Under the pieces are notes generated by a model that saw only the letters and a program-made list of their open reading frames with translations, did not search any database and was not told where the DNA came from. Shown here piece after piece: positions 11,455-63,869 of a stretch of 64,000 nt of DNA; the stretch's first letter is position 1; each line of letters begins with the position of its first letter. Source of the stretch: Ylistrum balloti (taxonomy: Eukaryota); the NCBI RefSeq assembly GCF_031769215.1, contig NW_026782097.1:434001-498000 (forward strand), written 5' to 3'. The position numbers and the translations under genes were made by a program.

Positions 11455-13050
11455 TTAATATCTTCTTATGTGAGTTGGAAAGCTTCTATAATAGCCGCCA
11501 TCCTGTTCCGGATACCTATCTGTGAGCCAATCATTGTCATAGATATCACTATCATCATAACGGTTCCAACTGTTCAAACCATATCTCCTAACTGGTAAAC
11601 CAAAATTTTGGAGTCCCCATACTCCGTTATGATAATCTGAAACAGAACAGAAGTTTTTCATTATCCAAAAGGTTCATAAACAATATGTGTTGATGGAAAT
11701 TTCTCACCATGAATTCAAAATATACCAAGACACACAAGTGTTTATTTATTACATACGTAGAATAATATACAACATAGCCAAATCAGGAACTGTATCGTAC
11801 AACAGTGTAGTCCTAATCCTAGACTCATTAGTGATGCCAAGTGCATTGATTGAAATATAGGTAATTTTAAAACACACTTTCGCGTATATCTTTTCTGTTC
11901 GTTAATCTTTTGAAGACAACTAATATTCATTGTTGTATGATTTGCGTTACACATGTGATGCTAGGAATACGCTGGAAGTATGGCCACGAAAACATTTACA
12001 AAAAAAAAGTAAAACAGAAACCTGGACCAATGGTTACTATGGTATCCTGTATGATCCGTACAGAAATACGCAACCTGATATATTGACAGTAGTCCGTACA
12101 GAAATAATTACACTGAAAATTTGCACAATGATCCGTACAGAAAAAAGGATCTGTACAGTAATACTCACACTGATAACCTACTCAATGATCTGTACAGTCA
12201 TACTTACACTGATAACCTACTCAATGATCTGTACAGTCATACTTACACTGATAACCTGCTCAATGATCTGTACAGTAATACTTACACTGATAACCTGCTC
12301 AATGATCTGTACAGTAATACTTACACTGATAACCTACTCAATGATCTGTACAGTAATACTTACACTGATAACCTGCTCAATGATCTGTACAGTTATACTT
12401 ACACTGATAACCTGCTCAATGATCTGTACAGTAATACTTACACTGATAACCTGCTCAATGATCTGTACAGTTATACTTACACTGATAACCTGCTCAATGA
12501 TCTGTACAGTTATACTTACACTGATAACCTGCTCAATGATCTGTACAGTAATACTTACACTGATAACCTGCTCAATGATCTGTACAGTTATACTTACACT
12601 GATAACCTACTCAATGATCTGTACAGTCATACTTACACTGATAACCTGCTCAATGATCTGTACAGTAATACTTACACTGATAACCTGCTCAATGATCTGT
12701 ACAGTTATACTTACACTGATAACCTGCTCAATGATCTGTACAGTAATACTTACACTGATAACCTGCTCAATGATCTGTACAGTAATACTGCTGCTTAGTG
12801 ATCCAAAATGATCCATATAATAATATTTTCCCTGCCATTCTGTCTAGTAATCCATACAGTAACAGGGATACTTGCCATGATATTCTACATAGTGCCTTGC
12901 ATGAATGTTTACACCTAGTTTAAATAAGCATACCCTTATATCTAGATTTTCTGATCCGTACACAACAATTCTACAAACCGTACATGAATACTTACATTGA
13001 CAGAATGTCGACGCCACCAGGCAAGACAACAGTAATAATACTTTCAGCAT
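11455..13050 (-). CDS. Gene A: small secreted Asp/Tyr/Trp/Arg-rich protein, 78 aa; divergent relative of the Gly/Tyr-rich family
   Basis: join complement(11455-11636,12996-13050), 237 nt, phase-1 intron with GTAAGTAT donor and tttcag acceptor. Protein MLKVLLLLSCLVASTFCQYYHNGVWGLQNFGLPVRRYGLNSWNRYDDSDIYDNDWLTDRYPEQDGGYYRSFPTHIRRY. The signal peptide is near-identical to that of the GY family. There is a 5'UTR acceptor at 13068 and a GTAAGT donor 32 nt after the stop (11422). Confidence 0.85.
12148..12789. repeat. 39-bp minisatellite, ~16.5 near-identical copies, inside the gene A coding intron
   Basis: Unit gatctgtacagtaatacttacactgataacctgctcaat; explains the repetitive ORFs 11930-12811, 12121-12798 and 12607-12816. 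Confidence 0.95.
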
Positions 13051-14465
13051 GTTTACCTCTAAGATGGTCTGCAACAATATTTGATATGACTATGGTTACA
13101 CATGTATACGACTTGCGTATGTATATTTCTGTATATATATATTACTGATCATAAAATGATTGTCTTTATCATGAAAATGAAAGATATAACTATATGTAGA
13201 CATACATATTCTTTATTTAATAACGATCAGGTTAGGAATGAAATACGCATGTTATTTTGTCTAAACAATCAAATATATGTCATGTTTTAATCACAACTCG
13301 TGATTGCTCACTCGTCAGGTATATTGAAGTTATTATATGTTTAGATGTCTATTTTCTATATTCTATTTATTTCATTGAAACTTTTTTTTAAAGACAAAAT
13401 CAATCGTGTTTCCCATGTCTTCTTAAACACAGGTAAAGTATCAAGCTGTCCATACCGCATTTTTCAAAAAAAAATTATGAAATAGATATTAGTGTGTTTA
13501 CACCATTTTTTTATGGTATATTACTTGACCATAAGTTTTCCAAAATATGATTTAAATGCTATAGTCTACTTGTGTTACCTTATCTTGATATATAATCACT
13601 TTTTCTTAGAGACGAGTACAACTGTGACAAAGTTACACCAAATTGATCAGTATAATAATTTTGTTTTCCCTTCTGTGAAATTTCCATTTCTTTATGGTAA
13701 CATTCATACTGTCCTCGCATGAAGTGTTCACCTTCCGCAGTGAATTTGATATTCATGGAAGTGTTGCCAATATCAAGAAAACTGTTAAAGATGTCGTCAG
13801 CTGACATACATAATTATAAGGATTTCAAAAGATTCATTTTGATGAACACTTTAAGGGTCGCTACCACCACCTCACTGAAAAACATTATTTTTCTTTGTGG
13901 GATATGAAGTTAGATTACTTTGATGCGCATTGGAAGTTTCCTTGTTTTGAACATGATCCAGGTAAACTTCGTCTACAAAGCAGACACATGAAATTTCGGA
14001 ACAGCTGGTCTTATTCTTCTAGTTCGCATTCAAATGGTCCTGTTTTATTGTTTCTCCCTTTTCCTATTCATCCCTTGTTTCTTTGCGTTTTAGATTAAAA
14101 CAGTATTTTTAATCTTTAATTTTATTTTTTAGATCGAAATTCTAAAATTGCCAGTTGATAATGAATCCAGTAGCAAATGTATATCCCTCAATAAGTAATA
14201 CCTTTATTTTATCAGTTATAAGTTAAATAATACTGTATACAGTACATGTTAATTGTATATCCTTGGGGTTTAATTTCGATCATGATAATTTGTTAGAGCA
14301 CCTCCTATAAATATCAATAGCAAAACCATTATAAAATGTAGGTCGAGAATACGACAAATATAAATCTTTACTGTATGGTTTAATATAATTATATACACTT
14401 GCATTTCTTAAAATCATAATAGTTTTCAACTCAAACCTTTCGTAATATACTGTTTGCACACATAC

Positions 14466-14558
14466 CTTACTCAACGGTAGTTCGATGGTGACTCTCCACA
14501 GCTTTTGTTGAAGTTCAAGCAATGGTTGTTGATATTAGATCCGATGTCCTTTTATATA
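14466..14558 (-). promoter_or_regulatory. Candidate TATA box and non-coding exon 1 of gene A
   Basis: TATATAAA at complement 14551-14558. The exon ends GAGTAAG|GTATGT at 14466 and contains GTCACCATCGAA, similar to GTCGTCATCGAA in exon 1 of the GY paralogs. Confidence 0.5.
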
Positions 14559-17609: not shown

Positions 17610-17978
17610 TTTTAGTGAATTGTTAGTTGGAATTGCATTTTTTTAATTATCTTGTTGGCTCTCTTTCAATAACAAAAACATTATTCAAGCATTTAGTGAG
17701 AAACACAAATACATGTTCTTGTAAAAGGAAAGTTATTAGTCCTAGGACAATATATAAATAAGACATTTGTCTTTATATTTATTACACATTTCAATTTGTT
17801 TATCTTTTATAATTAGTAAAGAGGCACCTATCGTACAACACGGAGATACACTTCCATATGTGTATGTTTGTCGTTTAAAAATCATATCTCTCGCAAAACG
17901 TATATGGTAACATTAGGAGTACGTTCAATAATAAACCAATTGTAACGCTCTGGTAGACTTTATTAATGTTTTATCTAA

Positions 17979-18409
17979 CTAGTTATAAGATCTAACTGGT
18001 GCTTCAGGCCTAACTCCACGTCTGTTTGCCCACTGACTTCCTCTGGTGTCTCTCCAACTATCATCCCTTCTGTCTGTCCATCCACTGCTACCCTGTCTCC
18101 AGCGACGATCTACACGTCCTGTCACAAAGTCATCGTTAATCCTAGGGCCCACATTTCGTCCTCTAAAGCGACTCGCACTGTCTGAGCCGACTCCTCGACC
18201 TGTCACTAAATCGCCAAACCCAAAACCTGTTCCTCTTTCTCCAAATACACCTGCTCTTTTTTGGCCTGATACCTGACCACCAAACACAGCATCTCCTCTG
18301 CGTCCAGAAACCAGACCGGCAAAGGCGGACCCTTCTGCACGTCTGCCGAAAAATCCACCTCCATCACGTAGCGGACCAGTGGTTGCCACCCCGCCAACAT
18401 TCTCTGGGC
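17979..18409 (-). CDS. Gene B terminal exon: Gly/Arg/Trp-rich low-complexity protein with an RGD motif; 5' exon(s) unresolved
   Basis: Acceptor tttgtatag| at 18409 (phase 1), open to TAG at 17979: GPENVGGVATTGPLRDGGGFFGRR..SGRRGDAVFGG..VDRRWRQGSSGWTDRRDDSW..PVRSYN. It is a GC-rich island in AT-rich DNA, with AATAAA ~15 nt after the stop (complement 17959-17964). Confidence 0.75.
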
Positions 18410-21369
18410 CTATACAAATGATAAGATATCAATCGTCATACATTGCATTATCAATGTGTTTGTAACTATCTAAATAGGTTTTGTTGTATCACCATTTTAA
18501 TACATGTACATCGTTTAACGATAACATTTCAATTACATTTTTACTTTTAATTGAAACAGCAATAACAACTATCACCTCTCTGCTTAGTGCTAAGGAGTAT
18601 GGAACACACCTGTCATAATAAGTGTGTTAGTAATGCGTTTAGTTAAGATTAACAATGTGCTAACGTCATTTGATTGATAAAGACAAATTAATATTTCCTT
18701 GTGAACGTACCACGGCCTTTATAAATTGAAAACGTCGTGTTTCTGAGAGAATGATTAGATATCTCAGAAGACATTAGAACGTCACGATTTAACCAATGGT
18801 TTACTGTTTAATATTGTATTGTATGACAGAATATATCCACAGATTCTTCATGGTTTGAATGTAAATGAGAGAAAGCTAGAAATGTACATGGGAATTATTC
18901 GATGAAAACCCACTTTATTCCACCTTTGATTTCCTTGCGTCCGAACTGGAAAGTCGGTGAATTTGAATGCAGCGACAAGAAACCGTCGCTCTGATTGGTC
19001 AAAACGCCATATCATTATTGACGATGTATGGTTTCCTCAATGATGATCAAAGGATTAATAAATCACTATATTTCACTGGCAAGCAAAATATGATAAAACA
19101 TTTTTCTGATAGATGTGGTACTACTGATTATATCTGAAGCCTAGGATAGATATGGTTCATAAGCCCTTTCACTGATTCGATGTAGGATCGATATCGGTTC
19201 TGTAATATATTCATCACGTTGTATTCTTCTTACAGGTATGGGGAAATACAAAAAACACATTTCGTCAATAACCAATCAGTATCGACAATTGGAAAACATC
19301 CATATTATACCTGTCACAACACCGTCATTATGAATCAGATTACAGAATGAATGTTAGGAGTTTGACCTAGCTTTTATGTTATATGAACTTCCGGTAACAT
19401 CAGAGATTTGTCCAAAGTGACAACAACGCGTGAAATTTTCCGAAACGGCTAACCAGACAGACTGCTAGCTTGACAAGTCACACTGGATGAACTTTTGATA
19501 ACCTGACATGATGTATACTGTAACACAAGGTAACGCAAAGCACGTGGACAAAGACTAGCGAATATATCCTCAATATGATGTCACGCTCACCATATCATAT
19601 CTTCAAAATATCATATTCTAAATTGGAATTAATAAATTTAAGATGAATAATACATTATGAAACGATATTTTCCCAACTTCATGAGTAGTTTAAATACTGT
19701 CACTTTATTCCCGATAAAAAAGTCATATTTATCAGCCATGAAAAAAACGGTAAAACCCCGGTTTCAATGTGTTTCTAAAAGTAGATTCATGACATGATGA
19801 AAAGTGCATCGTCAACATTACACTGCTTACAAAACATTGGTATTTATTTTGCAATTATGAAGAAATTTTTAATTAGAAAACTCCTTATAGTACGTCTTTC
19901 CATGAGACGCAAATCAAACTATGATATGAACATATGCCTCTGAGTAAAAGCCAGTCTTCCAAATTTATTACATATTAAGGTGATTTGGAATGGATTTTCC
20001 TCTTAAATTATTATCTTGCCTTCTTTGCCTTGTTCTTGCCAAGACAGCTGCAAGTACACATACAATACGCAGTATATAACATTGATCATCCGGTGGTATG
20101 TTAATATTGTCTACACAATGTTTGGATCTCACCGTAGGATGGACGTAGGTAGGAGTTACACAAAACACATGATATCAGACAGGCGCTTGTAAACAGCAAC
20201 TGTATCATAGTGATGATCTGGGGAAAACTGAAATTATGCAAATCAAAAGTAATTATGCAATCAATAATGTGTCATTATCATTATGTTTACATGCCTTATT
20301 GTTAAAAAGATACCAACATGCTAACTTGAGCACAGTCCAAACTCAAATTCAATCAAACTAGTGTAAAATATGAACAGAAGAAAATTTTACACGAAGATTC
20401 TTGAAAACTACAAGCTGAATAAGACAAGGTGTTTCGGAAGGGTAAGCGTACTATTAATTCAAACCATACAGGTGCATTTATTGAGATAATTTATTTAAAT
20501 AATCTACTCCAATTACATGTATTCTTGTGATGGGAACGCCTATACAAAATGATCTGTTCCAAGAACAGGTATACATTTTACCCATGTAAGGATATACCTA
20601 AATAACCATCTACTTCAAACGGAAACAGGTAGGTATTGATTTACTTACTTTGACGACTTAAAGATACGAAATCCACTCCAGGTAAAACATCTGTTTTTGA
20701 ATCGGATTTGAGACATATTTATATCTATCCTATACCGGAAACTACTGTAATTATCGTTTAGTAAAATTAAGTATAAGGATATTTTCTTAAAGATACGATT
20801 GGATAAGATAGATATGTAATTAAATCAGAAATATGCGTCACTGCATGTGAAGACTTGAAAGCTACAACTTGTGGTCTAACCTCAAACAGACCGCGAAGGA
20901 AATGTTATAATTTAATAAATGGAGGTCTTCTTGCACTGGTCAGTGTTATAAATTGTGACATCATGTGTTGTCAGCATTACATTGATTCCTTTCAAATCCT
21001 TTTTATTTAATCACAGACGTGTTCTTTTGTTTTGCGGGTCCTTTGTGGTATAAATGTGTGTAGATTGCGTATCTTAATTGTGTATGCAAAATATTTGTGG
21101 CGATTTTTCAACTGAAATTTGATTCTTAATATCATTTCGAAAAGTCTTATTACAATTTTGGACTATAAGACAAATGATCAGTCACGATTTAGGTGAAATT
21201 ATAGTTACTTCATATACAAGACATCGTCAACTGATAGACAAATTCGTAACACAGAGTTTCAAACTATTCAGGTTAATCAAACATTTTGTGAAATTGTACG
21301 AACGTCTAAGTGATCTCATCGGGAAATATTCAATTTCCTTATACGATTTTAAGCTATATGTGTTTGATG

Positions 21370-28480: not shown

Positions 28481-29041
28481 AAATCTCGTGAAAAAATAAT
28501 CTAGGAAGTTCCGGAATTACCAGCGTCAGCAAATTCATCAATAATGTCACGTTCCCAAATGAGAACAAGGTAAACAACTAACTAAGAGCACCAAGTACGT
28601 CAAACTTCATAATATAAAGTTTTCACCAATCAGATGTTCGACCTTTTCAGAGTGTGCACTGTCGAGATATTTTGTTCATAATCGCACTTAATAAGTATAA
28701 GTACGTAGTATAATGTAAATTTCCCGTCACAATGGTGCCTACATAATGTACCATCATACACGATACAGGTTCATCCCAAACTATATTTGAAAACAAAATT
28801 ATTTAACTGATCTATACGAATATTGCCGCTCGAGTTAGAATTTCTCGTTCATACTTTCATATTGAAGACTGAATTCATCAGTTTCCTTAACATCAATAAA
28901 TTACAAAACACATCATACTGGTTACAAACGTTTTTATTACATGAAAAACAATATTGTCAATGTGGTGTAAATTATGCTAGGACAAATGGATCTGCAATGA
29001 GACATTGACAGGTTATTATTGGCAACAATTAATTTGATATC

Positions 29042-29536: not shown

Positions 29537-30237
29537 GGTGTTGGTTAGGTGGCTACTGAAACATGGATATGTTATGAGATATCATTTTATTTGCTGTTTC
29601 ATTTCTTTTACATTGCATGGTCACACTAGACAGTAACAATGAATTTTCTGTATACTGAACATATTACCTTATTACACAGTACCCGACATTAGACAATAGG
29701 TTTGAGTTCTAAGTATATTGTATATTTGACCATTAGCCAATTATAGATAGATATCAGAAGTCAAGGTATTGAATACAAAGTAATGTATGTAATAACGGTT
29801 ATCAGATAACACATGACAAAATGACAAAATTATAAATTCTGATTCTCGAAACATATAGCTGGATATTTACTGTTAGTAACTGATGAGTGGGAATAATTAC
29901 CTAGTTGAAAATGCGAGAGATAGTATTCTGGAAAATGAATTGATATAAGCGCTAAACTTGTATTTTCATCCAATATGCAATATAAGTATATGTTATATTG
30001 TTGAATGTAATGAATAAGATATTGTATTAAATAAAACTAAGCATGAAAACAAAAGGGAACCAAGGAATATAGTAATATACTTTTGAACTCGGAGGACTTA
30101 ATTAAAAACATGTACAATAGTTTGACTCCCGATTCTCTTGGAAGCTATAATTAGCAGGTAATACAATCACATACAACTCACAATCGGACAGACACTTACC
30201 TAGAAATCAGTCCGATTCGATGACGACTTAGGATTAC

Positions 30238-49025: not shown

Positions 49026-49060
49026 TATAAATATGTTCGAAGACCGAGTAAAAGTCATTC
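49026..49060 (+). promoter_or_regulatory. TATA box + initiator of copy 5
   Basis: TATAAATA at 49026; Inr A at 49057; donor CTAG|GTAAGT at 49098. Confidence 0.75.
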
Positions 49061-49817
49061 GTAATCTTAACACGTCATCGAATCGGACTCATTTCTAGGT
49101 AAGTGTCTGTCCGATTGTGAGTTGTATGTGATTGTATTACCTGCTAATTATAGCTTCCAAGAGAATCGGGAGTCAAACTATTGTACATGTTTTTATTTAG
49201 TCCTCCGAGTCCAAAAGTATATTAATGTATTCCTTGGTTCCCTTTTACTTTCATGCTTAGTTTTTTGCTTATACAAGATCTAATTAATCACATTCAACAA
49301 TATGATATATACTTATATTGCATATTGAATGAAAATACAAGTTTAGAGCTTATATCATTTCATTTTCCAGAATACTATCTCACGTACATTGAACAAGATA
49401 ATTATTCCCACTCGTCCGTTACTATAAGTTAATATCCAGCTACATTTTATGAGAATAAGAATTGACAATTTTGTCATTTTGTCATGTGTTATCTGATAAC
49501 CGTTATTACATACCAAACCACGTTGTTTCCAGCATCATTCATATCCAATGGTTACACTCTACTTTGTATTCAATACCTTGACTTCTGATATCTATCTATA
49601 ATTGGCTTATGGTCAAAGATATGTCATATATATATAATACTTAGAACTCAAACATATTGTCTAATGTCGGGTATTTTGTAATAAGGTAATATGTTTAGTA
49701 TACAGAAAAAGACGTCTTTATTGTCAAGTATGCCCATGCAATGTAAAAGAAAGGAAACAGCAACTAAAATGATATTTCATAACATAATCATGCTTCAGTT
49801 GCCACCTAACCAACACC

Positions 49818-50311
49818 ATGCTGAAGGTAATGTTTCTCCTGTCCTGCCTTGTGGCTAGCGGTCTCTGTCATTATTATGGTAAGTACTTGATGTACAGAAT
49901 TTTCACAAGCAAATTGACGAACATCAAAAATTTTGTTATATCACCAAATTTGTATCCATGGCAACATTATCAAGACGATTTATGAAATTGATACACGTTC
50001 ACTGCTTTATGTTTGTTAAAGTAAGTCTATCTTCTCCATGTTTTACCATAGTGTTCGATTGTATGGTTATGATATGTTTTTATAAATACATCATTTTTGC
50101 AGGAAATTCCTATGAGTATGGTCTGGGATCAATATTAGACGGCGGATTCGGAAATGACATTGGACTTGTTGGTTATGGTGGATTGGGGTCCGGATATGGA
50201 AACAACTTCGGTCGTGGAGACTACGGACTCGAAGGATACGGATATGGAGGCTACGTACGTGGAGATGGAAACAGGTGGATGAGACGAAAACCCAGATTTG
50301 GTGGATACTAA
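49818..50311 (+). CDS. GY-family copy 5, 89 aa (subtype A)
   Basis: join(49818-49878,50103-50311). MLKVMFLLSCLVASGLCHYYGNSYEYGLGSILDGGFGNDIGLVGYGGLGSGYGNNFGRGDYGLEGYGYGGYVRGDGNRWMRRKPRFGGY. 3'UTR intron 50342-50640; AATAAA at 50694. Confidence 0.92.
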
Positions 50312-53300
50312 GTCAATTGTCGCCAGTTCTTTAAGTTCCGGGTAATATTCATTATTGGCTGTTTTCTTGTTTTCTTTGGTAAATGTCTTATGTCTGTTGT
50401 TTAAGTGGAAAGTGTTACAGTACAAGATACAAACATAGCGACAATTATAATATGCTACATCTGATCCGACGTATACGTTAATCATTAGTAATTCCAGTAT
50501 GTACGTAAATACACATAGATATAACACAACCTGTAGATGTATAAGGAAATTTATTCTGAAAGAACCTACTCATATTCCGTTACGATGATAATAAGATGTT
50601 GATCTTGTTATTGTCTAATGATATTTCTCTTCTTTTGTAGAATCATCTTGTCAAGAATTTACCATTAATTGATTACCAAAGATAATTTTAATTAATAAAA
50701 GGTATTTGTCTTTAAAAGATGTGTTTGTAATTTATTTCGTGATATTGAAGCTGCAGGTATATTCTGGCTCTATGGTGATGTTATCCAGGGGCATTTCAAT
50801 TCCTGGGGGATATTCTTGTTGGATTGAGCCATCAAATTGTTTCTGGATTCTGGATTTTTTTACTGCTATGAAGATTTTACCGACTTATCTCCACTAGAGG
50901 ATCGATGTATGGATCAGTTAAAAGGGAACGTTTGTGTGGTCGACTTCAACACTGTCTGGAGTAAACATGTATCTATTTTTAACGGTACATTTCGTACATT
51001 TGAAGAACAATTTACACAATGATTACAAATTTTTTACTTATGACAACCAATTATGGACAAAATCCGTCCTACAGTTTACACGATTTAAAGAATGACTGAA
51101 TAATTGAAACACTACTTTTACTGTTTCGCTCATGATGCTAAGTCATCATTACAATTAAAATCTTCCACAACATTTGATTTCAGGTGCGTCTAGTTCACCC
51201 AAACATTCATCTAAGCTTTTTACTACCACTCCTAGTACGTCATGTTCCGAATTACCGTCCTGTGTTGGTTTTAATATCTCTGCTGTGAATTATCCATTTC
51301 TGGATATCATCGACCCTCCATTCACAGCCTATGATGTCAACATATTGCAGTTGATTCGATATCAAAGCGTTGTTCCCGATATGCAAGATGTCAGTAACTG
51401 ACAAACAAACTCTTGACACGTGGTTTCGAGATATGTAAAGTGATAAAGGTTTTGAAGAAGTTTTAAGATCGTCATAAAAAAAAACAAAACAAAAACCACT
51501 GGGACTCCTGAAACGAACAAAGAGTATTAATCGAAGTGTACCGGTAGGGTAAAGTGTCTTCTGCTTAATACGATCAGAAGAAGATAAACAACAACGGAAC
51601 AACCAGTTTTAAAAAAAGGAAAAAACATAAAGCACGTCCGATCTCACATCGCAAATGACAATGTGATATTTCCAAATGAGATCACATGACGTCCGTAAAA
51701 CTTCCTCAAAATCTTTATCAGCTTACATATCTCGACAGAACATGTCAAGAGTTTGTTTACATAACGACATGCAATGTGGTTAAATTGGCTTTTCCTTGGT
51801 CGCTTTCAAACATTTTTTGGCACCAAGCATCACTAACGCATTCTAGAGCGACAAAACAGCTGTTGATGCTGTTCAAATCATTCTTTGGCTCTAATGTATT
51901 CTAATAATATATTGGTAAATGGTCGTTTATCGGGTGTTTTTCGTTCTAACCCCGTTTAATCTTGGCACATGGATATCAATTTGCATTTGTAGTTACATTG
52001 CATATTTTGTGATGACGTATTGTATTTAATAACACTTGGTATTTGATCATTAGCAGACTTCATATTGTTTTGACCTCTATGATAACAAATGAAAAGTATA
52101 CAAAAGTCACACAAATGATAAGTGTCTGTCAGTACCATTTTAGAATTCGATGCTTCAGAGTAAAGTAGTAAAGTAAACTATATGATTAAGTTTTTCTTTT
52201 AATATTCGTCAGTGATGCTGAGGGTCGTAAGGTTGAAACCGAGGAGGCGACAAAGTCAAATAAGAAATGAATCGAAAGAAATGTCGAAAAGACAATGTGA
52301 TGACTAACCAATTTATTCAATGAAATGTCTGTCATTGATGATAATTTTAGAAAAATGTCAGTTACGTCGTATATTTTCAAAGATGTCATTATTGGAATGA
52401 AGATGGCTTTCTCAAGTTATATCTCTTGTTTTCTGATGTCAGTTTCGCGATGTTGACTGAATTCAAGTGGTTTCAGATAGCTATTTGAAAGTCATTTATT
52501 TGAACAGTAAATCTTTTACATGAATTGGTCATATTGATCATCTTCCATGCTAACAAAACGGTCCGATTTCACAATTACAATAGCTAAGACCATGTATATA
52601 TTTTTACTCATCAAAACATTAAGATTCGAAGATTAAACAAATGTTTTGCAGTAGAAAGTTTATACGAGGTTCTAGTATAATAAAAATGAGCCAAAGAAGC
52701 TGGCTCCGTCAGGTCAGTGACAGAGACCGTAGTTAACACTATTTACAAGTCACACTCGCTCGTTTCACAATTTTGATTATTACAGACCAAACAGGATTAT
52801 TCTGAAAGAGAATCGAATGCACCATGCTTACTTTTTAACCACTCTCTTATATGCCTGAAAAATAATATAATCTTTCCGAGGCTATTCATCCAAATCAGGT
52901 AGTTTTCAACACTTGGAATTATATATTTTCGTCAGATCACAAATTACGGTTTATATGATGAATTATGTATTTTACATTACTAACACTGTCCTAAAACGCG
53001 AAATGTCTATTAAACTACAGTGTACAATAGGTATATCATATCACATTAATTTCTCCACATTCTAGTTATCCGACATGCAGGGAGTGCACATTTTGATATT
53101 CTTGTTTCGAACCTGAATGGTATTTATCAGGTGTGTACATGTTTGAGGTACAGATTTAGATTTTTCAATTCATAAATGTTGTGTATAAAACATTGCATCT
53201 ACGGCTTCGAACAAAATGAATTGATTTGTGTGGTGTTATATAAGGTTTTACTCAATTATCTTTTGGTGTAAGAAACACGTATGACATGGTGTATATTATT

Positions 53301-56565: not shown

Positions 56566-57432
56566 TACAGTATACCTGCTTAATCATGAGCCAAACAGTA
56601 AAAGTAAGGTTTTCATTTTTCAGTCATTCTTTTAATCTTAACATGTAAACCGCTGGAGGGCTTTGTCAATAAATTGCGTGTCATAAGTAAAAATATGTAA
56701 TCGTGGTGTAAATTGTTCCTCAAATGTATGGAATGTACCGTTATAACAGATACGTGTTTACTTCAGACAGTGTTGAAGTCGGCTACACAAACATTTCCTT
56801 TTAACTGATCCATACGTTGAGAACATCGATCCTCAAGTGGAGATAACTGAGTAAAATCTTCATAGCACTAAGAAAATCCATAATCCAAAAATATTTTGAT
56901 GGTTCAATCCAACAAGAATAGGCCCGATGAATTGAAATGGCCCTGGATAACATCACCATAGAACCAAAATATATCTGCTGCTTCAATATCACGAAATAAA
57001 TTACAAACACATCTTTTTAAAGAAAAATACCTTTTATTAATTGTAAAACATTTTTGGTAATAAATAAATGGCAATGGTAAATTCTGATTGACAGGATGAA
57101 TCTGCAAAAGAAGAGAAATATCATTAGACATTAGACAAGATCAATACATTAATATCATCGTAACGGAATATGAGTAGGTTATTTCTGTATAAATTTCCTT
57201 ATACATCTACAGGTTGTGTTATATCTATATGTATTAACGTACATACTGGTATTTCTAACGACTAACGTATACGCCGTATCAGATGTATCATATTATAATT
57301 ATCGATATGCCTGTATCCCGTACTGTAACAATTTCCACTAACACAACTGGCATCAAACATTTACCAAAGAAAACAAGATAATAGTCAACAATGAATATTA
57401 CCTGGAAGTTTTTCTAATGGCGCACAATTGGC

Positions 57433-57907
57433 TTAATATCCACCAAATCTTGAGCTCCGTCTCATCCACCTGTTTCCGTATCCACGTCCGTAGCCTCCAT
57501 ATCCGTATCCACCGTGTCCGTAGCCTCCACGACCGTAGTAGTTTCCATATCCGGTTCCCAATCCCCCATAACCAAGGAGGCCAAAGTCGTTTCCGTATCC
57601 ACCGTCTAAAATTGATCCCAATCCATATCCATAGGAATTACCTGAAATAGATCGTTTTACATACAGACTTTAATTCCTGAACTCTTTTAATTAGTAAATA
57701 CATTTTTGATCAAGAAAACGGCATCTCAGAAACGTTGAATGAATTAATTTTCGAAATGATGTGACAAAATGTTCGTTGTTGATCATTTTATACGGTGAAA
57801 ATGTTGTGTAGTATATATCCGAAATTTCTGTTCATCCAGTACTTACCATAATAATGGCAGAGACCGCTAGCCACAAGGCAGGACAGGAGAAACATTACCT
57901 TCAGCAT
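57433..57907 (-). CDS. GY-family copy 6, 89 aa (subtype B)
   Basis: join complement(57433-57641,57847-57907). MLKVMFLLSCLVASGLCHYYGNSYGYGLGSILDGGYGNDFGLLGYGGLGTGYGNYYGRGGYGHGGYGYGGYGRGYGNRWMRRSSRFGGY. Exon 1 at 58438-58479; introns 1 and 2 largely unlike subtype A; 3'UTR intron 57102-57401. Confidence 0.92.
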
Positions 57908-58475
57908 GGTGTCGGTTAGGTGGCTACTGAAACACACCAAACATACGTTTACTCTAATTACACTGTGATTAAAGAGTGATCAGCAACTAAAACATACAAC
58001 ACTGTCCGAATGAATTGCTGTTAAATAAATAACATTATAATCGTTTATATTAGATAAAAATAAAACATCCTCTGTCCATGTCACTAGTTTTTCAAAAGGG
58101 CAATTGAGAAAACAACGGACCCTTGGTATATATTGAGTAGAGAGAACGACTTTCATTACAACATACGTGAAAAATATATGTTTGTCAGGAAGAAAGAAAT
58201 ATCCGGATGAACGTTGTTCATAGTTGCAAAAGTAGAAACGAAAAATAATTTATTTCGATAATTAGGTAACTTCGTTTACGGTAACCACGGAATTTTTATC
58301 ACAATCTCGTAGTTACAATAAATTTTACAAATAGACGCAGATTTAATATAAGATTTACAGATTGGAGCTTTACGCTAGAATGATCAGGTAATCTTATCAC
58401 ATACAGCTCTAAGATGATTGCAATGACAGACACTTACCTAGAAATCAGTGCGATTCGATGCCGAGTTAAGATTAC

Positions 58476-58510
58476 GAGTGACTTTTGGTCGGTTCTCAGA
58501 CATATTTATA
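58476..58510 (-). promoter_or_regulatory. TATA box + initiator of copy 6
   Basis: TATAAATA at complement 58503-58510; TCACTC with A at 58479 (31 nt). Confidence 0.7.
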
Positions 58511-59608
58511 CAAGTTGATCAAGGAAACAAGGAAATATATCTCAAATGCGATTCGTTAAAACGGCAAAGATGACAAATGACCAGAGTGTGACGCATCAGT
58601 ACCAATAGTGACCTGTGTCCAGTCATACTGCTACGAACAGGTCATAAAAACTGCCCTAGGCATACGGACAACTGCGTAAAAGCTACCTGTAAATATGAAT
58701 GAAAGGCATGTCAGGGTTCTTTTACTATTAAGTATTGTTTTTTTTGGGAAAATGACATTTTGGCACAATTCTGAGAACTTGCAATTTTTTATACTAGAAC
58801 CTCGTATAAACTTTCTACTGCAATCGTTTGTTTAATCTTCGAATCTCAATTGTTTTGATGGGTAAAAATATATCCATGGTCTTAGCTATTGTGATCGTGA
58901 AATAGGACCGTTTTGTTAGCATGGAAAATGATAAATCTGACGAATTCATGTAATAGATTTGCTGTTCAGATAAATTACTTTCAAATAGCTCTCTGAAACC
59001 ACTTGAATTCAGTCAACATCGCGAAACCGACACTAGAGAAAAAGATATAAATTGAGAAAACCATCTTCATTCCAATAATGACATCTTTCAGAATATTCAA
59101 CGTAACTGACATTGTTCTAAAGTTATTATAAATGACAGAAAAAATTATTGAATATTAAAAGAACAACTTAATCATACAGTTTACTTTACTACTTTACTCT
59201 GAAGTATCGAATTCTAAAATTGTACTGACAGACGCTAATCTTTTGTGTGAATTTTGCATACTTTTCATTTGTTATAGAGGTCGGCTAATGATCAAATACC
59301 AAGTGATATTAAATACATTACGTCATCACAAAATATGCAATGTAACTACAAATACAAATAGATATCCTTGTGTCAAGATTAAACGGGGTAATCGAGAACC
59401 CTATGTAGCCGAGGTAGGTTATCTGACACTGAAGAAGTCATGCGTATCATTACATGTCGGGTATTTTGTAATAAGCTAATATGTTTACTATACAGGAAAA
59501 AGACATTTTTTTACAGACCAGTATGCCCATCCAATGTAAAAGAAAGGAAACAGCAAATGAAATTATATTTCATAACATGACCATTTCAGTATCAACCTAA
59601 CCAACATC

Positions 59609-60099
59609 ATGCTGAAGGTAATGTTTCTCCTGTCCTGCCTTGTGGCTAGCTGTCTCTGTCATTATTATGGTAAGTACTGGATGTACAGAATTTTCACAAG
59701 TAAATTGACGAACATCAAAAATTTTGTTGTCACCAAATTTGCATTTTTGGCTACATCAGCAAGACGATTTATGAAATTGATACACGTTCAATGCTTTCTG
59801 TAAGTTTAATTTTCTCCATGTTTTACCAAAATTGTTTTATATCCACATTATTTTTGCAGGAAATTCTTATGTGTATGGTCTGGGATCAATATTAGACGGC
59901 GGATACGGATACGGACATTGGACTTGTTGGTTATGGTGGACTGAGGTCCGGATATGGAAACAACTTCGGTCGTGGAGACTACGGACTCGAAGGCTATAGA
60001 TATGGAGGCTACGGACTCGAAGAATACGGATATGGAGGCTATGGAGGTGGATACGGAAACAGGTGGATGAGACGGAGATCTAGATTTGGTGGATACTAA
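59609..60099 (+). pseudogene. GY-family copy 7: +1 frameshift, 30-nt internal duplication, lacks the family promoter and exon 1
   Basis: Exons 59609-59669 and 59860-60099 (240 nt = 209+30+1). ggatacggaTACGgacatt replaces ggatacggaAATgacatt, giving a premature TAG at 59997-59999. Homology to paralogs stops upstream of ~59454. Confidence 0.85.
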
Positions 60100-61674
60100 G
60101 TCAATTGTCGCAAGTCGCAGGTAATATTCATTATTGGCTGTTTTCTTGTTTTCTTTGGTAAATGTCTGATGTCAGTTGTTATAGTGGAAAGTGTTACAGT
60201 AAAGGATACAAACATAACGACAATTATAATATGATAGATCTGATCCGACGTAAACGTTAGTCGTTAGAAATACCAGTATGTACGTTAATACACATAGATA
60301 TAACACAACCTGTTTATGTATAAGGAAACTTGTTCTGAAATAACCTACTCAAATTCCGTTACGATGATATTAATGTATTGACCTTGTCTATTGTCTAATG
60401 ATATTTCTCTTCTTTTGCAGATTCATCCTGTCAATCAGAATTTACCATTGCCATTTATTTATTACCAAAAATGTTTTACAATTAATAAAAGGTATTTTTC
60501 TTTAAAAAGATGTGTTAGTGTTTTATTTCGTGATATTGAAGCAGCAGATATATTCTGGTTCTATGGTGATGTTATCCAGGGCCATTTCTATTCATCGGGC
60601 CTATTCTTGTTGGATTGAACCATCAAAATATTTTTGGATTATGGATTTTCTTACTGCTATGAAGATTTTACTCAGTTATCTCCACTTGAGGATCGATGTT
60701 CTCAACGTATGGATAAGTTAAAAGGAAATGTTTGTGTAGCCGACTTCAACACTGTCTGAAGTAAACACGTATCTGTTTTAACGGTACATTTCGTACATTT
60801 GAAGAACAATTTACACAATGATTACATATTATTATTTATGACATGCAATTATGGACAAAAAAACATCCTACAGTTTGCACATTAAGATTAAATGAATGAC
60901 TGAAGAATGAAAACCTTACTTTTACTGTTTCGCTCATGATTAAGCTGGTATACTGTAAATATCATGTTACTTTTAATTCTACATGGATAAAGCATGGAAA
61001 GAATCATCATATCTACATTCTCTGTTAGGTTTGGTAATGGTCCATTGGGGCACAAATTAAACACATTGTGTTACAGTGACAATATTGAAAATAAGAAAAA
61101 GTATTGAACATCCAGTAACTTTTGATTCATCGCAGGTTTTCAATTACGTAGCATCACTGACAAAGACCTAGTGTATGAGACAGATGTATAACAAAGTTAA
61201 GGTTCTTAACCTTTTCTGAAATTTGAAAATAATAATTTAATACAAATAGTATTGCCATAAGTGTTTCTTTCACCAAAAAGATATTTCAGCAGAGCCTTAT
61301 TAAATTCAATTCATTTTGTTGTTGAAACCGTAAATCCAATGTTTTACACACAACATTTATGAATTGAAAAATCTAAATCATGACCTTCATCATTTACACA
61401 CCTGATAAATACCATTCAGGATCGAAACAAAATTATAAAAATGTACACTCCCTGTATGACGGATAACTAGAAATTAACGTAATATGAGATATATATTGTA
61501 CACTGTAGTTTAATAGCCATTTCGCGTTTTAGAACGGTCTTAGTAATGTAAACTAAAGTACATAATTCATCATATAAACCGTAATTTGTGATCTGACGAA
61601 AATATATCAATATAATATTAATATATTATATATTCATCATTATACAAAGATATTGAAATATCAAGGAAAACAAA

Positions 61675-62185: not shown

Positions 62186-62528
62186 AGATTTTTCAATTCA
62201 TCAATGTTGTGTGTAAAATATTGCATCTACGGCTTCAAACAAAATGAATTAAATTGTGTGGTGTTATATAATAAGGTTCTACTCGAGTATCTTTTTGGCG
62301 GAAGAAATACGTATGGCATGGTGTATATAATTTGTATTTGATAATTTTCAAATTTCAGATTTTCAATTCATATATGTTGTGTGTAAAATATTGCATCTAC
62401 GGCTTCAAACAAAATGAATTAAATTGTGTGGTGTTATATAATAAGGTTCTACTCAATTATCTTTTTGGCGGAAGAAATACGATTGGCATGGTGTATATAA
62501 TTTGTATTTGATAATTTTCAAATTTCAG
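62186..62528. repeat. ~170-bp tandem duplication in the copy-8 downstream flank
   Basis: agatttttcaattca..gataattttcaaatttc occurs twice (starts ~62186 and ~62357). Confidence 0.85.
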
Positions 62529-63660
62529 AAATGAGTAAGAACCTTAACTTTGTTATACATCTGTCTTGTTCACTAGGTCTTCGTCAGTGATGCTACCTTA
62601 TTGAAATCCTGCGATGAATCAAAAGTTGATGGATGTTCAATGCATTTTCTAATTTTCAATATTGTCATTGTAACATAATATGTTTAATTTGTGGCCGAAT
62701 GGACCATTACCTAACCTAACGGAGAATGTACATGTGATGATTCCTTCCAAGCTGTATCCATGTGGACTTGAAAGTAACATAATATTTACAGTATATCTGC
62801 TTAATCATGAGCGAAACAGTAAAAGTAAGGTTTTCATTCTTCAGTCATTCTTTTAAACTTAACATTAAACCGGTGTGGGGGCTTTGTCCATAATTGCTTG
62901 TCATAAGTAAAAATATGTAATAATTGTGTAAATTGTTCTTCCAATATACGAAATGTACCGTTATAACAGATACGTGTTTACTTCAGACAGTGTTGAAGTC
63001 GACCAGACAAACATTTCCTTTTAACTTATCCATACATGGAGAACATCGAGTGGAGATAAGTTAGTAAAATCTTCATAGCAGGACGAAAATCCAAAATCTA
63101 AAAATATTGTGATGGTTCAATTCAACAAGAATATTCCCGAGGATTTTAAATGCCCCTGAATAGCATCACCAGAGAACCAGAATCTATTTGTTTCTTCAAT
63201 ATCACGAAATAATTACAAACACATCCTTTTAAGGCAAATACATTTTATTAATTGTAACATATTTTTGGTAATAAATTAATGGAAATGGTAAATAATGCTT
63301 GACAAGATGAATCTGCAAAGAAAGAGAAATAACATTAGACAATAGACAAGATCAACATCTTATTATCATCGTAACGGAATATGAGTAGGTTATTTCTGTA
63401 TAAATTTCCTTATACATATACAAGTTGTGCTATATCTATGTGTATTAATATATACAATAATATATAATTACAAACTGGAATTACTTACGACTAACGTATA
63501 CGTTGGATCAGATATAGCATTTTACTGTAATCGTTATGTTTGTATCTTGTACTGTAACATTTTCCAGTTAAACAACGGGTTTCAGACATTTACCAAAGAA
63601 AACAAGAAAACAGTCAACAATGAATATTACCTGGAACTGTAAGAACTGGCGACAATTGAT

Positions 63661-63869
63661 TTAGTATCCACCAAATCTAGATCGCCGTCTCATCCACCTG
63701 TTTCCGTATCCACGCCCGTAGCCTCCATATCTGTATCCACCGTGTCCGTAGCCTCCACGACCGTAGTAGTTTCCATATCCGGTTCCCAACCCCCCATAAC
63801 CAAGGAGGCCAAAGTCGTTTCCGTATCCACCGTCTAAAATTGATCCCAATCCATAGCCATAGGAATTAC
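63661..63869 (-). CDS. GY-family copy 8 payload exon (subtype B); signal exon lies beyond the window end
   Basis: Acceptor ttttag| at 63869, 209 nt to TAA: GNSYGYGLGSILDGGYGNDFGLLGYGGLGTGYGNYYGRGGYGHGGYRYGGYGRGYGNRWMRRRSRFGGY. 3'UTR intron 63313-63630; AATAAA at complement 63244-63249. Confidence 0.88.

What the first reader, a model, noticed from the sequence alone, without database searches (positions are those of the whole stretch)
11455..63869. Unannotated cluster of small secreted low-complexity proteins: eight Gly/Tyr-rich paralogs plus divergent relatives on one gene scaffold
Seen: eight copies encode the same 89-aa design (17-aa signal peptide, GYG/GGY/GLG body, basic C-terminus RWMRRxxRFGGY). 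They share a four-exon plan, and the TATA-to-Inr spacing is 31 nt in all six copies whose promoter is visible. Gene A shares the signal peptide and plan. Known: Gly/Tyr-rich secreted proteins with basic tails are typical of molluscan shell-framework, periostracum and byssal secretomes (e.g. shematrins and KRMPs), which are often tandemly expanded, and their Tyr can be oxidised to DOPA for cross-linking. Inference: the signal peptide and C-terminus match none of the families I can recall, so this may be a new biomaterial protein family.
Basis: partly seen in the sequence, partly recalled or inferred. Interest (0 to 1): 0.88.

Follow-up and report, generated by a model that had tools for sequence, protein, structure and literature searches.

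The report
Unannotated scallop Gly/Tyr-rich secreted-protein gene array
A saucer-scallop (Ylistrum balloti) locus holds eight copies, five or six apparently intact, of an unannotated gene for a small secreted glycine/tyrosine-rich protein with no detectable relatives; it shows signs of selection, but its role (shell or ligament material versus defence peptide) could not be tested.

Summary
The observation largely holds. The window is Ylistrum balloti contig JAUZWB010000499.1. Eight exon-3 copies end in RWMRRxxRFGGY. Six splice into complete 89-aa precursors: a 17-aa signal peptide and a 72-aa, Cys-free, 31-39% Gly / 15-21% Tyr body. One copy (c60p) is a promoterless, frameshifted pseudogene, one is cut by the window end, and c38m has lost its exon-1 donor. 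TATA-to-Inr spacing is 31 nt in all six visible promoters.

The exons are conserved islands between the two subtypes (E1 91%, E2 95%, E3 86%) while introns 1-2 are unalignable, and dN/dS is 0.22-0.28. These look like real, constrained genes.

No RNA run could be found, so splicing and tissue of expression are unverified. No protein homologue or Pfam family was detected, and RefSeq does not annotate these genes.

New context:
- The "orphan RGD exon" belongs to annotated LOC132548950, which has its own signal exon.
- Gene A is the ortholog of an annotated 89-residue gene in Mizuhopecten yessoensis.

The locus therefore reads as a conserved pectinid signal-exon scaffold carrying unrelated payload exons. 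The GY proteins are not KRMP, shematrin, abductin or myticalin. A cross-linkable material protein is my preferred reading, and a Gly/Tyr-rich defence peptide is the main rival. I rate this a new member of a known kind, of moderate interest.

The parts
42356..43975 (+). GY copy c43p, the reference model. TATA at 42356 and Inr A at 42387. E1 42387-42428, E2 43126-43205 (ATG 43145), E3 43385-43623 (stop 43591-43593), E4 from 43889. The poly(A) signal position reads GATAAA.
   Evidence: The intact 89-aa ORF is shown.
28930..30281 (-). GY copy c29m. TATA at 30272. E1 30241-30200, E2 29555-29476 (ATG 29536), E3 from 29250 (stop ends 29042). Intron 3 is mostly deleted and AATAAA lies at 28938. This copy is closest to the type I consensus (7 synonymous, 2 conservative changes).
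31158..32745 (+). GY copy c32p. TATA at 31158. E1 31189-31221 (9-nt deletion), E2 31876-31955, E3 32158-32396 (stop ends 32366), E4 from 32673, AATAAA at 32736. The ORF is intact but has 5 replacements, including L42R and G49R.
38450..40046 (-). GY copy c38m. TATA at 40037. E1 40006-39965 with the donor mutated from GT to AT. E2 39291-39213 (donor GTATGT), E3 39027-38789 (stop ends 38819), AATAAA at 38456. The ORF is intact but has 6 replacements, mostly at Gly. It is probably decaying.
49026..50700 (+). GY copy c50p. TATA at 49026. E1 49057-49098, E2 49799-49878, E3 50103-50341 (stop ends 50311), AATAAA at 50694. The ORF is intact, with replacements G72V and Y75D.
57030..58519 (-). GY copy c57m (type II). 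TATA at 58510. E1 58479-58438, E2 57926-57847, E3 57641-57402 (stop ends 57433), E4 from 57101, AATAAA at 57038. The ORF is intact and the body is richer in Gly and Tyr.
59590..60490 (+). GY copy c60p, a pseudogene. No promoter or E1 was found. E2 59590-59669. E3 59860-60120 carries a +1 frameshift near 59893 and a 30-nt duplication. E4 from 60421, AATAAA at 60484.
63240..64000 (-). GY copy c63m (type II), cut by the window end. E3 63869-63631 has an intact ORF (stop ends 63661). E4 from 63312, AATAAA at 63249. E1 and E2 lie beyond 64000.
11423..14558 (-). Gene A. TATA about 14556. E1 about 14523-14466, E2 13068-12996 (ATG 13050, MLKVLLLLSCLVASTFC), E3 11636-11423 (stop 11457-11455). The 78-aa precursor has a Tyr/Arg/Asp/Asn/Trp-rich payload unrelated to the GY body. 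Intron 2 holds a 39-bp x 16.5 tandem array.
   Evidence: Orthology of the promoter, E1 and E2 start to an annotated Mizuhopecten gene is shown.
17959..20732 (-). Gene B, which is the annotated LOC132548950 (XP_060068834.1, 168 aa). TATA at 20723. E1 about 20692-20649, E2 20227-20133 (ATG 20208, MIQLLFTSACLISCVLC), E3 18409-17979, AATAAA at 17964. The Gly/Arg-rich payload carries G-RR / G-QKR-flanked units.
41058..41794 (.). 17-bp minisatellite (TTGATTACATAACAGTA, about 43 copies) between the divergent c38m and c43p promoters. Related arrays lie at 33642-33728 and 47805-48025.
   Evidence: Contigs of all four DNA runs skip 40607-42037.

Best explanation
This is a tandem/inverted array in Ylistrum balloti of at least eight paralogous genes. 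Five or six look intact.

Each gene has four parts:
- a TATA+Inr core promoter and a short non-coding exon 1;
- exon 2, which encodes a 17-residue signal peptide and ends in phase 1;
- exon 3, which encodes the rest of a 72-residue mature protein;
- a short 3'UTR exon.

The mature protein is about 7.8 kDa. It has no Cys, is 31-39% Gly and 15-21% Tyr, and is predicted to be unstructured. The Gly/Tyr body is neutral to acidic. It ends in a strictly conserved Arg/Trp-rich basic tail, GNRWMRRxxRFGGY.

The array sits in a conserved pectinid locus of small secreted-protein genes. These genes share the 5' scaffold (promoter, exon 1 and signal exon) but carry unrelated payload exons. Gene A has an annotated ortholog in Mizuhopecten, and Gene B is LOC132548950. 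The GY payload was then amplified as head-to-head pairs by birth-and-death duplication.

Shown here: the gene anatomy, the conservation pattern, the coding constraint, the absence of detectable homologues, the absence of annotation, and the synteny.

Inferred: secretion, and the function. I take the most likely function to be an extracellular material or matrix component (shell organic framework, periostracum, hinge ligament or another secreted structure). In that reading the GYG-type tyrosines are oxidatively cross-linked, and the basic tail docks on acidic partners or mineral.

The confidence of 0.45 applies to the whole statement, including the material function. That at least some copies are real, constrained genes for secreted proteins I put at about 0.85.
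For: Anatomy and copy number.

Exon-island conservation between c43p and c57m:
- E1 91%, E2 95% and E3 86% identity;
- introns 1 and 2 about 48%, which is effectively unalignable.

Coding constraint:
- dN/dS is 0.22-0.28 between subtypes, with dS 0.35-0.45, and 0.10 for c57m versus c63m.
- c43p and c57m differ at 12 residues, against 19.5 expected from 29 random substitutions (P = 0.003).
- There are no indels in 209 coding nt, against 10 indel events in 594 flanking nt.
- The GY frame has the fewest amino-acid changes and no stops among the six frames.

Protein properties:
- AlphaFold gave no secondary structure, mean pLDDT 50.

No homologue or family.

Unannotated although the neighbour gene is annotated.

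Scaffold shared with Gene A: (E about 1e-5). Gene A is orthologous to an annotated Mizuhopecten gene: (0 of 1000 shuffles reach the observed score). The payloads are not similar beyond composition (shuffle P > 0.1).

The material reading rests on analogy. Gly/Tyr regions of pearl-oyster KRMPs, and a Tyr/Gly-dominated periostracal transcript, are interpreted as quinone-tanned (PMC3191542). Lineage-specific, rapidly duplicating low-complexity proteins dominate mollusc mantle secretomes (PMC4897951). Scallops use a small secreted Gly-rich protein, abductin, as hinge elastomer (PMC9999432).
Against: - No transcript, tissue or proteomic evidence exists. The only runs found are DNA, and RefSeq did not model these genes.
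- Overall nucleotide divergence of E3 (14.4%) equals that of the adjacent intron 3 plus E4 (14.8%). Constraint therefore shows only in the kind of substitution.
- Within the younger type I copies dN/dS is about 1 or higher, with radical Gly/Tyr losses. One copy is frameshifted, one lacks a splice donor and one lacks a canonical poly(A) signal.
- Every feature cited for a material role also fits Gly/Tyr-rich antimicrobial peptides: small size, secretion, Gly/Tyr richness, clustering and a conserved signal exon.
- Adult Ylistrum is a free swimmer, so a byssal role is unlikely (own knowledge).
Confidence: 0.45

Rival explanations
1. Host-defence peptides. The GY proteins, or their released cationic Arg/Trp-rich C-terminal peptide, act as secreted antimicrobial effectors. 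The analogy is with the Gly/Tyr-rich NLP/CNC peptides of Caenorhabditis. The conserved signal exon with divergent payloads would then reflect effector diversification.
For: - The Atlas feature search lists nematode-specific Gly/Tyr peptides (PF07312) among the compositional look-alikes.
- The C. elegans nlp-29 cluster is six Gly/Tyr-rich AMP genes in 12 kb, diversified by local duplication under selection (PMC2453101).
- The charge is split between a neutral-to-acidic body (0 to -4) and a +4/+5 tail that follows an RR site.
- A conserved signal peptide with hypervariable mature parts is typical of mollusc AMPs such as myticalins (PMC5577615).
- dN/dS is about 1 or higher among the recent duplicates.
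Against: - There is no homology to any AMP family. Myticalin's signal consensus, three-exon plan and anionic C-terminal extension are not met.
- Net charge of the whole mature protein is only +1 to +4.
- Substitutions between subtypes conserve or raise Gly/Tyr content rather than diversify it.
- The recent replacements look like decay, because they co-occur with a lost splice donor in c38m.
- Inducibility is untested.
Confidence: 0.25
2. Prohormone or bioactive-peptide precursor. The precursor is cleaved at the conserved RR (RWMRR|xxRFGGY), and in Gene A at two RR sites, to release signalling peptides.
For: - The dibasic RR is conserved in all eight copies.
- Gene A has two RR sites and an N-terminal Gln after the predicted signal cleavage.
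- Neighbouring Gene B and its Mizuhopecten orthologs carry tandem units ending in G-RR or G-QKR, the classic amidation/cleavage layout.
Against: - The GY tail has no Gly-dibasic amidation signal.
- A 55-residue Gly/Tyr-rich body is atypical as a spacer.
- Neither the Gene B-like nor the MLKV sequences appear in the text or held supplements of the Yesso-scallop ganglion neuropeptide survey.
- Eight copies of one identical peptide design is unusual for a hormone.
Confidence: 0.07
3. Largely dead array. The copies are recently amplified, unexpressed or decaying duplicates, and the apparent constraint comes from gene conversion or short divergence time.
For: - The genes are not annotated by RefSeq.
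- c60p is frameshifted and has no promoter. c38m lacks the E1 donor. c43p lacks AATAAA. c32p, c38m and c50p have radical replacements.
- E3 divergence equals the flanking non-coding divergence.
Against: - Seven of eight E3 frames are open, although each copy has 11-14 Tyr codons one step from a stop.
- dN/dS is 0.22-0.28 at dS about 0.4, and 0.10 between the two type II copies.
- E1 and E2 remain 91-95% identical inside unalignable introns.
- Promoter spacing and all but one splice site are preserved.
- The Y. balloti annotation probably had little RNA support, since no RNA run turned up.
Confidence: 0.12

Closest known systems
KRMP (lysine-rich mantle proteins) of pearl oysters
   Same: Both are roughly 10-kDa secreted mollusc proteins that combine a basic segment with a Gly/Tyr-rich segment. 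Both are multi-copy, lineage-specific expansions. The Gly/Tyr part of KRMPs is interpreted as quinone-tanned (PMC3191542; PMC4897951).
   Different: KRMP has a Lys-rich basic region with six conserved Cys directly after the signal peptide, followed by a C-terminal Gly/Tyr region. The GY proteins have no Cys and 0-1 Lys, their basic part is Arg/Trp-rich, and it lies at the C-terminus. No sequence similarity was detected.
Shematrins (glycine-rich prismatic-layer framework proteins, Pinctada)
   Same: Both are Gly-rich with Tyr, secreted, and form an expanded gene family. Shematrins have a short basic C-terminus ending in Tyr (RKKKY-type; own recollection of Yano et al. 2006, not checked here). 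Gene A ends in IRRY and the GY proteins end in RFGGY.
   Different: Shematrins are several times larger and built of long repeat domains. The GY proteins are 72 residues without a regular repeat. No sequence similarity was detected.
Abductin (scallop hinge-ligament elastomer)
   Same: Both are small, secreted, Gly-rich, unstructured scallop proteins (abductin is 116 aa mature). Tyr has been speculated as a cross-link site in abductin (PMC9999432).
   Different: Abductin is 58% Gly and Met/Phe-rich. [quoted passage not shown] The GY proteins are 31-39% Gly and 15-21% Tyr, with one Met, no decapeptide repeat and no Cys.
Caenorhabditis NLP/CNC Gly/Tyr-rich antimicrobial peptides (nlp-29 cluster)
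   Same: Both are small secreted Gly/Tyr-rich peptides encoded by a compact cluster of recent duplicates (PMC2453101). They are compositional look-alikes in the Atlas search.
   Different: They come from a different phylum, and no homology is detectable. Inducibility and antimicrobial activity are unknown for the GY proteins. The GY proteins also have a distinct conserved Arg/Trp tail.
Myticalins (Mytilus linear cationic AMPs)
   Same: Both have a conserved signal peptide with a hypervariable mature region, a non-coding first exon, a phase-1 intron, a multigene family and pseudogenes (PMC5577615).
   Different: Myticalins have a different signal consensus (MKGxxLLLLTI...) and three exons, with signal and mature peptide in one exon. 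They carry a KR site followed by a long anionic extension, and their mature peptides are Pro/Arg-rich.
Mizuhopecten yessoensis locus NEDP02001165.1 around 0.99-1.03 Mb ('glycine-rich protein 5-like' XP_021345868/XP_021345867 plus an 89-residue neighbour gene)
   Same: Gene B has a 51%-identical ortholog there. About 10 kb downstream lies an annotated 89-residue gene. Its promoter, exon 1 and exon-2 start (…TAGAGGTTAAC ATG CTG AAA GTA) align with those of Gene A.
   Different: No GY-type exon lies in the 33 kb of Mizuhopecten sequence that I could read. The 89-residue protein itself could not be fetched, so whether it is GY-like remains unknown.

Membership tests
KRMP | Lys-rich basic region with six conserved Cys directly after the signal peptide (PMC3191542) | tested here: not met
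   The mature GY proteins have no Cys and 0-1 Lys, and the region after the signal peptide is HYYGNSYEYG.
KRMP | C-terminal Gly/Tyr-rich region | tested here: inconclusive
   A Gly/Tyr-rich region is present but forms the N-terminal and central body. The C-terminus is the basic tail, so the order is reversed.
KRMP / shematrin | Detectable sequence similarity to family members | tested here: not met
   No hit at E <= 0.01 among proteins of 37-119 aa, none at E <= 0.001 in 1.84 billion representatives of any length, and none in Pfam. Low-complexity score correction lowers the sensitivity of these searches.
KRMP / shematrin | Expression in mantle edge or outer epithelium and presence in the shell matrix | not testable with these tools
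   No RNA run was found. Runs X1-X4 behave as DNA.
Shematrin | Large protein built of Gly-rich repeat domains with an RKKKY-type C-terminus (own recollection of Yano et al. 2006) | tested here: not met
   The mature GY protein is 72 aa (7.7-8.0 kDa) with no regular repeat, and the tail is RWMRRxxRFGGY. The defining features themselves were not checked against the paper.
Abductin | [quoted passage not shown] | tested here: not met
   The GY proteins are 31-39% Gly and 15-21% Tyr, with a single Met, no Cys and no decapeptide repeat.
Myticalin | Signal consensus MKGxxLLLLTIxxALCMIxECEG, three exons with signal and mature peptide in exon 2, and a KR site plus anionic C-terminal extension (PMC5577615) | tested here: not met
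   The signal is MLKVMFLLSCLVASGLC. The signal and mature parts lie in separate exons, and there is no anionic extension.
Pectinid 'MLKV signal-exon' genes (Gene A and its annotated Mizuhopecten 89-residue ortholog) | Homologous exon 2 (5'UTR end plus MLKV... signal peptide, phase-1 donor) behind a TATA promoter and a non-coding exon 1 | tested here: met
   GY E2 against Gene A E2 gives blastn E about 1e-5 to 1e-4 within the window. The exon plan is the same. The Gene A promoter, E1 and E2 start align to the Mizuhopecten gene, with 0 of 1000 shuffles reaching the score.
Pectinid 'MLKV signal-exon' genes | Homologous mature (payload) region | tested here: not met
   Local alignments of the GY, Gene A and Gene B payloads do not exceed composition-preserving shuffles (P 0.10-0.70).
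Nematode-type Gly/Tyr-rich AMPs (functional analogy only) | Induction by infection or wounding and antimicrobial activity | not testable with these tools
   No expression data are available. Only the compositional and cluster resemblance was seen.

The most novel reading that the evidence does not exclude
The locus is a conserved pectinid secretory cassette, made of a promoter, a non-coding exon 1 and a 17-residue signal-peptide exon ending in phase 1. New, unrelated payload exons have repeatedly been installed on this cassette. In the Ylistrum lineage one such new payload gave rise to a genuinely new Gly/Tyr-rich protein family, which was amplified to at least eight copies. It would serve as a cross-linked extracellular material, for example in the shell framework or hinge ligament of this fast-swimming scallop.
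Probability: 0.3. Interest if true: 0.65.

Novelty: new member of a known kind. Interest (0 to 1): 0.42.

Why it matters
If the genes are expressed, this adds a sequence-orphan family to the mollusc secretome: small, Cys-free, Gly/Tyr-rich secreted proteins in a scallop.

It also gives a clean genomic example of how such families arise. A conserved promoter and signal-exon scaffold, shared with an annotated Mizuhopecten gene, carries unrelated payload exons, and local head-to-head duplication followed with birth-and-death turnover.

It further shows that RefSeq annotation of a non-model bivalve misses a whole array of short low-complexity genes.

For biomaterials work, a 72-residue GYG-rich chain with a conserved Arg/Trp tail is an easily synthesised candidate for cross-linking or coacervation studies. 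For immunology, it is an equally easy candidate to test as a defence peptide.

However, lineage-specific low-complexity secreted proteins are the rule rather than the exception in mollusc secretomes, so a specialist would be only moderately surprised.

Tried and rejected
- RNA evidence. Two run searches returned only five runs. The four that were laid covered introns and intergenic DNA evenly and showed no intron-skipping joints.
- Protein homology. Exon-3 translations of GY and Gene A gave nothing, the exhaustive HMMER search gave nothing, and Pfam gave nothing. The Atlas returned only compositional look-alikes: KRTAP, cuticle, chorion and nematode peptides.
- Myticalin identity was rejected on the signal consensus and exon plan.
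- The idea that the RGD exon borrows c29m's signal exon was rejected. It has its own signal exon at 20208, and the spliced product equals XP_060068834.1.
- Common origin of the GY, Gene A and Gene B payloads was not supported by shuffle tests.
- Homology of the Gene B 5' region to the GY 5' region is only suggestive. They share GTTTCCGG…TATAAATATGT (P = 0.04; the motif occurs only in these promoters), plus one shared 10-mer in E1.
- Literature. No paper in the held library prints the signal or tail motifs or the accession numbers. The scallop byssal secretome paper lists larger Tyr-rich proteins of 20-29 kDa. The Yesso-scallop neuropeptide survey has no match in its text or held supplements. 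McDougall et al. 2013 on shematrin/KRMP evolution is not held.
- Rfam found no RNA family in the window.
- Left out: an exact-sequence look-up of the spliced 89-aa proteins in the cluster and contig tools. A spliced protein has no reference, and I did not type long sequences into a search tool.

Full report
**What is there**

Six-frame translation finds eight open frames ending in GNRWMRRxxRFGGY-stop. They lie at 29.0(-), 32.3(+), 38.8(-), 43.5(+), 50.3(+), 57.4(-), 60.1(+) and 63.7(-) kb. A 20-mer from the putative signal exon occurs seven times, against 0.01 expected by chance, each time 0.2-0.5 kb upstream of one of these frames on the same strand.

In c43p the reading is unambiguous. The acceptor TTTCAG is followed by 19 nt of 5'UTR. 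Then comes ATG CTG AAG … encoding MLKVMFLLSCLVASGLC-HYF, and a phase-1 donor G|GTAAGT. After a 179-nt intron, TTTTGCAG|GA AAT TCC … continues the frame to the stop. Splicing gives exactly 89 aa in c29m, c32p, c38m, c43p, c50p and c57m.

**Promoter and UTR exons**

Upstream, six copies carry GTATAAATATG. The A of GTCA[TC]TCG lies exactly 31 nt after the first T of the TATA box. A 42-nt exon 1 (33 nt in c32p) follows and ends at TAG|GTAAGT.

Downstream, a conserved donor CAG|GTAATATTC lies about 29 nt after the stop. An acceptor lies about 265 nt further on. AATAAA lies 63 nt after the acceptor in the four copies where both were located (c32p, c57m, c60p, c63m).

**Corrections to the observation**

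- c60p has a +1 frameshift and a 30-nt duplication in exon 3. Its homology to the other copies starts only about 136 nt before exon 2, so it has no promoter or exon 1. It is a pseudogene.
- c63m is cut by the window end.
- c38m has AT instead of GT at the exon-1 donor.
- c29m has lost the 3'UTR intron.
- c43p has GATAAA at the poly(A)-signal position.
- Relative to the type I consensus, c29m has 7 synonymous and 2 conservative changes. By contrast, c32p, c38m and c50p have 5-7 replacement differences against 1-2 synonymous ones, many of them G>R/E/V or Y>D.

The array is therefore a birth-and-death family, not eight equivalent genes. The copies are arranged mainly as head-to-head pairs (c29m/c32p, c38m/c43p, c57m/c60p).

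**Are they real genes?**

No RNA evidence could be obtained. The two run searches yielded five runs. The four that were laid cover introns and spacers evenly and show no intron-skipping joints, so they are DNA. They do show that the locus exists in other samples under two organism labels.

The case therefore rests on evolution. The copies fall into two subtypes: type I (c29m, c32p, c38m, c43p, c50p, and the pseudogene c60p) and type II (c57m, c63m).

- Between c43p and c57m, E1 is 91% identical, E2 95% and E3 86%. Introns 1 and 2 are about 48% identical, which is effectively unalignable. The exon boundaries coincide with the edges of conservation.
- dN/dS between subtypes is 0.22-0.28 at dS 0.35-0.45. 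It is 0.10 between the two type II copies.
- c43p and c57m differ at 12 residues, where 29 random substitutions would give 19.5 (P = 0.003).
- The coding part has no indel, against 10 indel events in the 594 nt that follow it.
- The GY frame is the one of six with the fewest changes and no stops.

Two cautions apply. Total divergence of E3 equals that of the adjacent intron 3 plus E4 (14.4% versus 14.8%). Within type I, dN/dS is about 1 or higher on very few changes. I put the probability that at least some copies are functional protein-coding genes at about 0.85.

**Whose genome, and the locus context**

The 136-codon Gly/Arg-rich ORF at 17979-18389(-) was noted earlier as an orphan RGD exon. 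It has a phase-1 acceptor at 18410. I found its own signal exon at 20208(-), encoding MIQLLFTSACLISCVLC-NSYLRPSYG with a phase-1 donor. That exon sits behind TATAAATATG at 20723 and a short exon 1.

A protein search with the exon returned XP_060068834.1, an uncharacterized protein (LOC132548950) of Ylistrum balloti. It is 100% identical, and its 168 residues are exactly my spliced prediction. The 22-kb locus fetched for it is identical to window 30208-7979. This places the window at 434001-498000 of JAUZWB010000499.1 in GCA_031769215.1.

In those 22 kb only this gene is called. Neither c29m nor Gene A is annotated. The absence of any self-hit for GY or Gene A, in a collection that does hold this RefSeq protein, confirms that they are unannotated.

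**Synteny with Mizuhopecten**

Gene B has 51%-identical orthologs in Mizuhopecten yessoensis: XP_021345868 ('glycine-rich protein 5-like') and XP_021345867. They form a tandem pair 11.4 kb apart.

Ten kb downstream of that pair an annotated gene for an 89-residue product begins. Its visible start, TTTGCAG|GCAATCCTAGAGGTTAAC ATG CTG AAA GTA, matches Gene A's TTGCAG|ACCATCTTAGAGGTAAAC ATG CTG AAA GTA. Its TATA region and exon 1 align with Gene A's over about 120 nt, and 0 of 1000 shuffles reach the observed score.

Gene A is thus the positional and sequence ortholog of an annotated Mizuhopecten gene, and the MLKV signal-exon scaffold predates the Ylistrum/Mizuhopecten split. I could not read that 89-residue protein, so whether it resembles GY, which is also 89 aa, remains open.

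**One scaffold, different payloads**

- GY exon 2 is homologous to Gene A exon 2 (E about 1e-5).
- The Gene B promoter shares GTTTCCGG…TATAAATATGT with the GY promoters (P = 0.04). That octamer occurs in the window only in these five promoters. One 10-mer of exon 1 is also shared. This link is only suggestive.
- The three payloads (GY body, Gene A body, Gene B body) are not similar beyond composition (shuffle P 0.10-0.70).
- No further signal-exon-like sequence exists in the window.

**The protein**

The mature GY proteins have 72 residues and weigh 7.7-8.0 kDa, with pI 8.2-9.5. They are 31-39% Gly and 15-21% Tyr and have no Cys. The body has net charge 0 to -4, and the last 14 residues have net charge +4 or +5.

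Type II differs from type I mostly by changes toward more Gly, Tyr and His. A single-sequence AlphaFold model has no secondary structure (mean pLDDT 50, pTM 0.11). This is weak evidence, but it is consistent with disorder.

The RGD in FGRGDYG is absent from c38m and from both type II copies, so it is not a conserved feature.

**What it is not**

- KRMPs require a Lys-rich, six-Cys basic region after the signal peptide (PMC3191542). This is not met.
- Shematrins are much larger repeat proteins (own recollection). This is not met, although a basic C-terminus ending in Tyr is loosely echoed in RFGGY and in Gene A's IRRY.
- Abductin is built of Met/Phe-containing GGFGGMGGGX repeats at 58% Gly (PMC9999432). 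This is not met.
- Myticalins have another signal consensus, three exons and an anionic extension (PMC5577615). This is not met.
- No Pfam family matches, and there are no sequence relatives. HMMER's correction for biased composition, together with the very large databases, could hide moderate similarity in a 68-residue Gly/Tyr-rich query.

**How it most likely works**

Shown: a secretory-type N-terminus on its own exon, a low-complexity Gly/Tyr chain under composition-preserving constraint, and an invariant Arg/Trp tail. The rest is inferred.

My preferred reading (about 0.45) is an extracellular material protein. Mollusc mantle secretomes are dominated by lineage-specific, rapidly duplicating low-complexity proteins (PMC4897951). 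Gly/Tyr regions there are read as substrates of quinone tanning (PMC3191542). Scallops already use a small Gly-rich secreted protein as hinge elastomer. In this model the GYG tyrosines are oxidised and cross-linked, and the basic tail binds acidic matrix proteins, chitin-associated components or carbonate.

The main rival (about 0.25) is a defence peptide. Nematodes use clustered, duplicated Gly/Tyr-rich secreted peptides as antimicrobials (PMC2453101). In addition, the anionic-body/cationic-tail split after an RR site resembles a propeptide/peptide layout.

A prohormone reading (about 0.07) draws on the RR sites and on Gene B's G-RR-flanked repeats. The Yesso-scallop ganglion peptide survey shows no such precursor. 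A largely dead array (about 0.12) is argued against by the constraint data.

**Verdict**

The 'new family' claim stands within the limits of low-complexity searching. The 'biomaterial' claim is plausible but untested. This is a new, unannotated member of a well-known kind of mollusc gene, the lineage-specific low-complexity secreted protein. The instructive evolutionary twist is the shared signal-exon scaffold, which has an annotated ortholog in another scallop.

Noticed in passing
window 17959-20732 (-); P0001, P0002: Gene B (LOC132548950) and its Mizuhopecten orthologs contain tandem units ending in Gly plus a dibasic site. Examples are AEGSAFAGLVS-GRR and GDAVFGGQVS-GQKR, and four GGAVFDGVVS-GRR-type 13-mers in Mizuhopecten. 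This is the layout of an amidated multi-peptide precursor, although the automatic name is 'glycine-rich protein 5-like'. The repeat number differs between the two scallops.
   Followed up: partly
L003:21290-22169 (Mizuhopecten yessoensis NEDP02001165.1, about 993.3 kb): An annotated gene for an 89-residue product starts here. Its promoter, exon 1 and MLKV start are orthologous to Gene A. Only its first 14 coding nt were readable, so its payload is unknown. It has the same length as the GY precursors.
   Followed up: partly
window 12148-12789: Intron 2 of Gene A holds 16.5 near-perfect (97%) copies of a 39-bp unit. Each unit contains CAGTGTAAGTAT, which resembles the exon-2 donor CAATGTAAGTAT just upstream. 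It is therefore an array of decoy 5' splice-site-like sequences inside the intron.
   Followed up: no
window 41058-41794, 33642-33728, 47805-48025: Arrays of a 17-bp minisatellite (TTGATCACATAACAGTA) lie 0.6-1.3 kb upstream of GY promoters, and one lies between the divergent c38m and c43p promoters. Contigs of all four DNA runs join 40607 to 42037 and skip this 1.43-kb stretch. This is either a structural variant or a collapse of short-read assembly.
   Followed up: partly
window 20735-20742, 30290-30297, 40055-40062, 42331-42338, 49002-49009: The octamer GTTTCCGG (reverse complement CCGGAAAC, an ETS-core-like site) occurs only five times in the window. Every occurrence lies 12-18 nt upstream of the TATA box of Gene B or of a type I GY gene (0.6 expected by chance).
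   Followed up: partly
window 22934-26216: A 3.3-kb block of adjoining satellites (21/44-bp, 76-bp and 34-bp units at 89-92% matches, GC up to 45%) lies between Gene B and the GY array. It had no Rfam match.
   Followed up: partly
window 39274-39275: c38m reads CAACATG ATG just before its start codon. Contigs of the four DNA runs carry the CACC ATG context seen in the other copies. This is either allelic variation or cross-mapping of paralogs.
   Followed up: no
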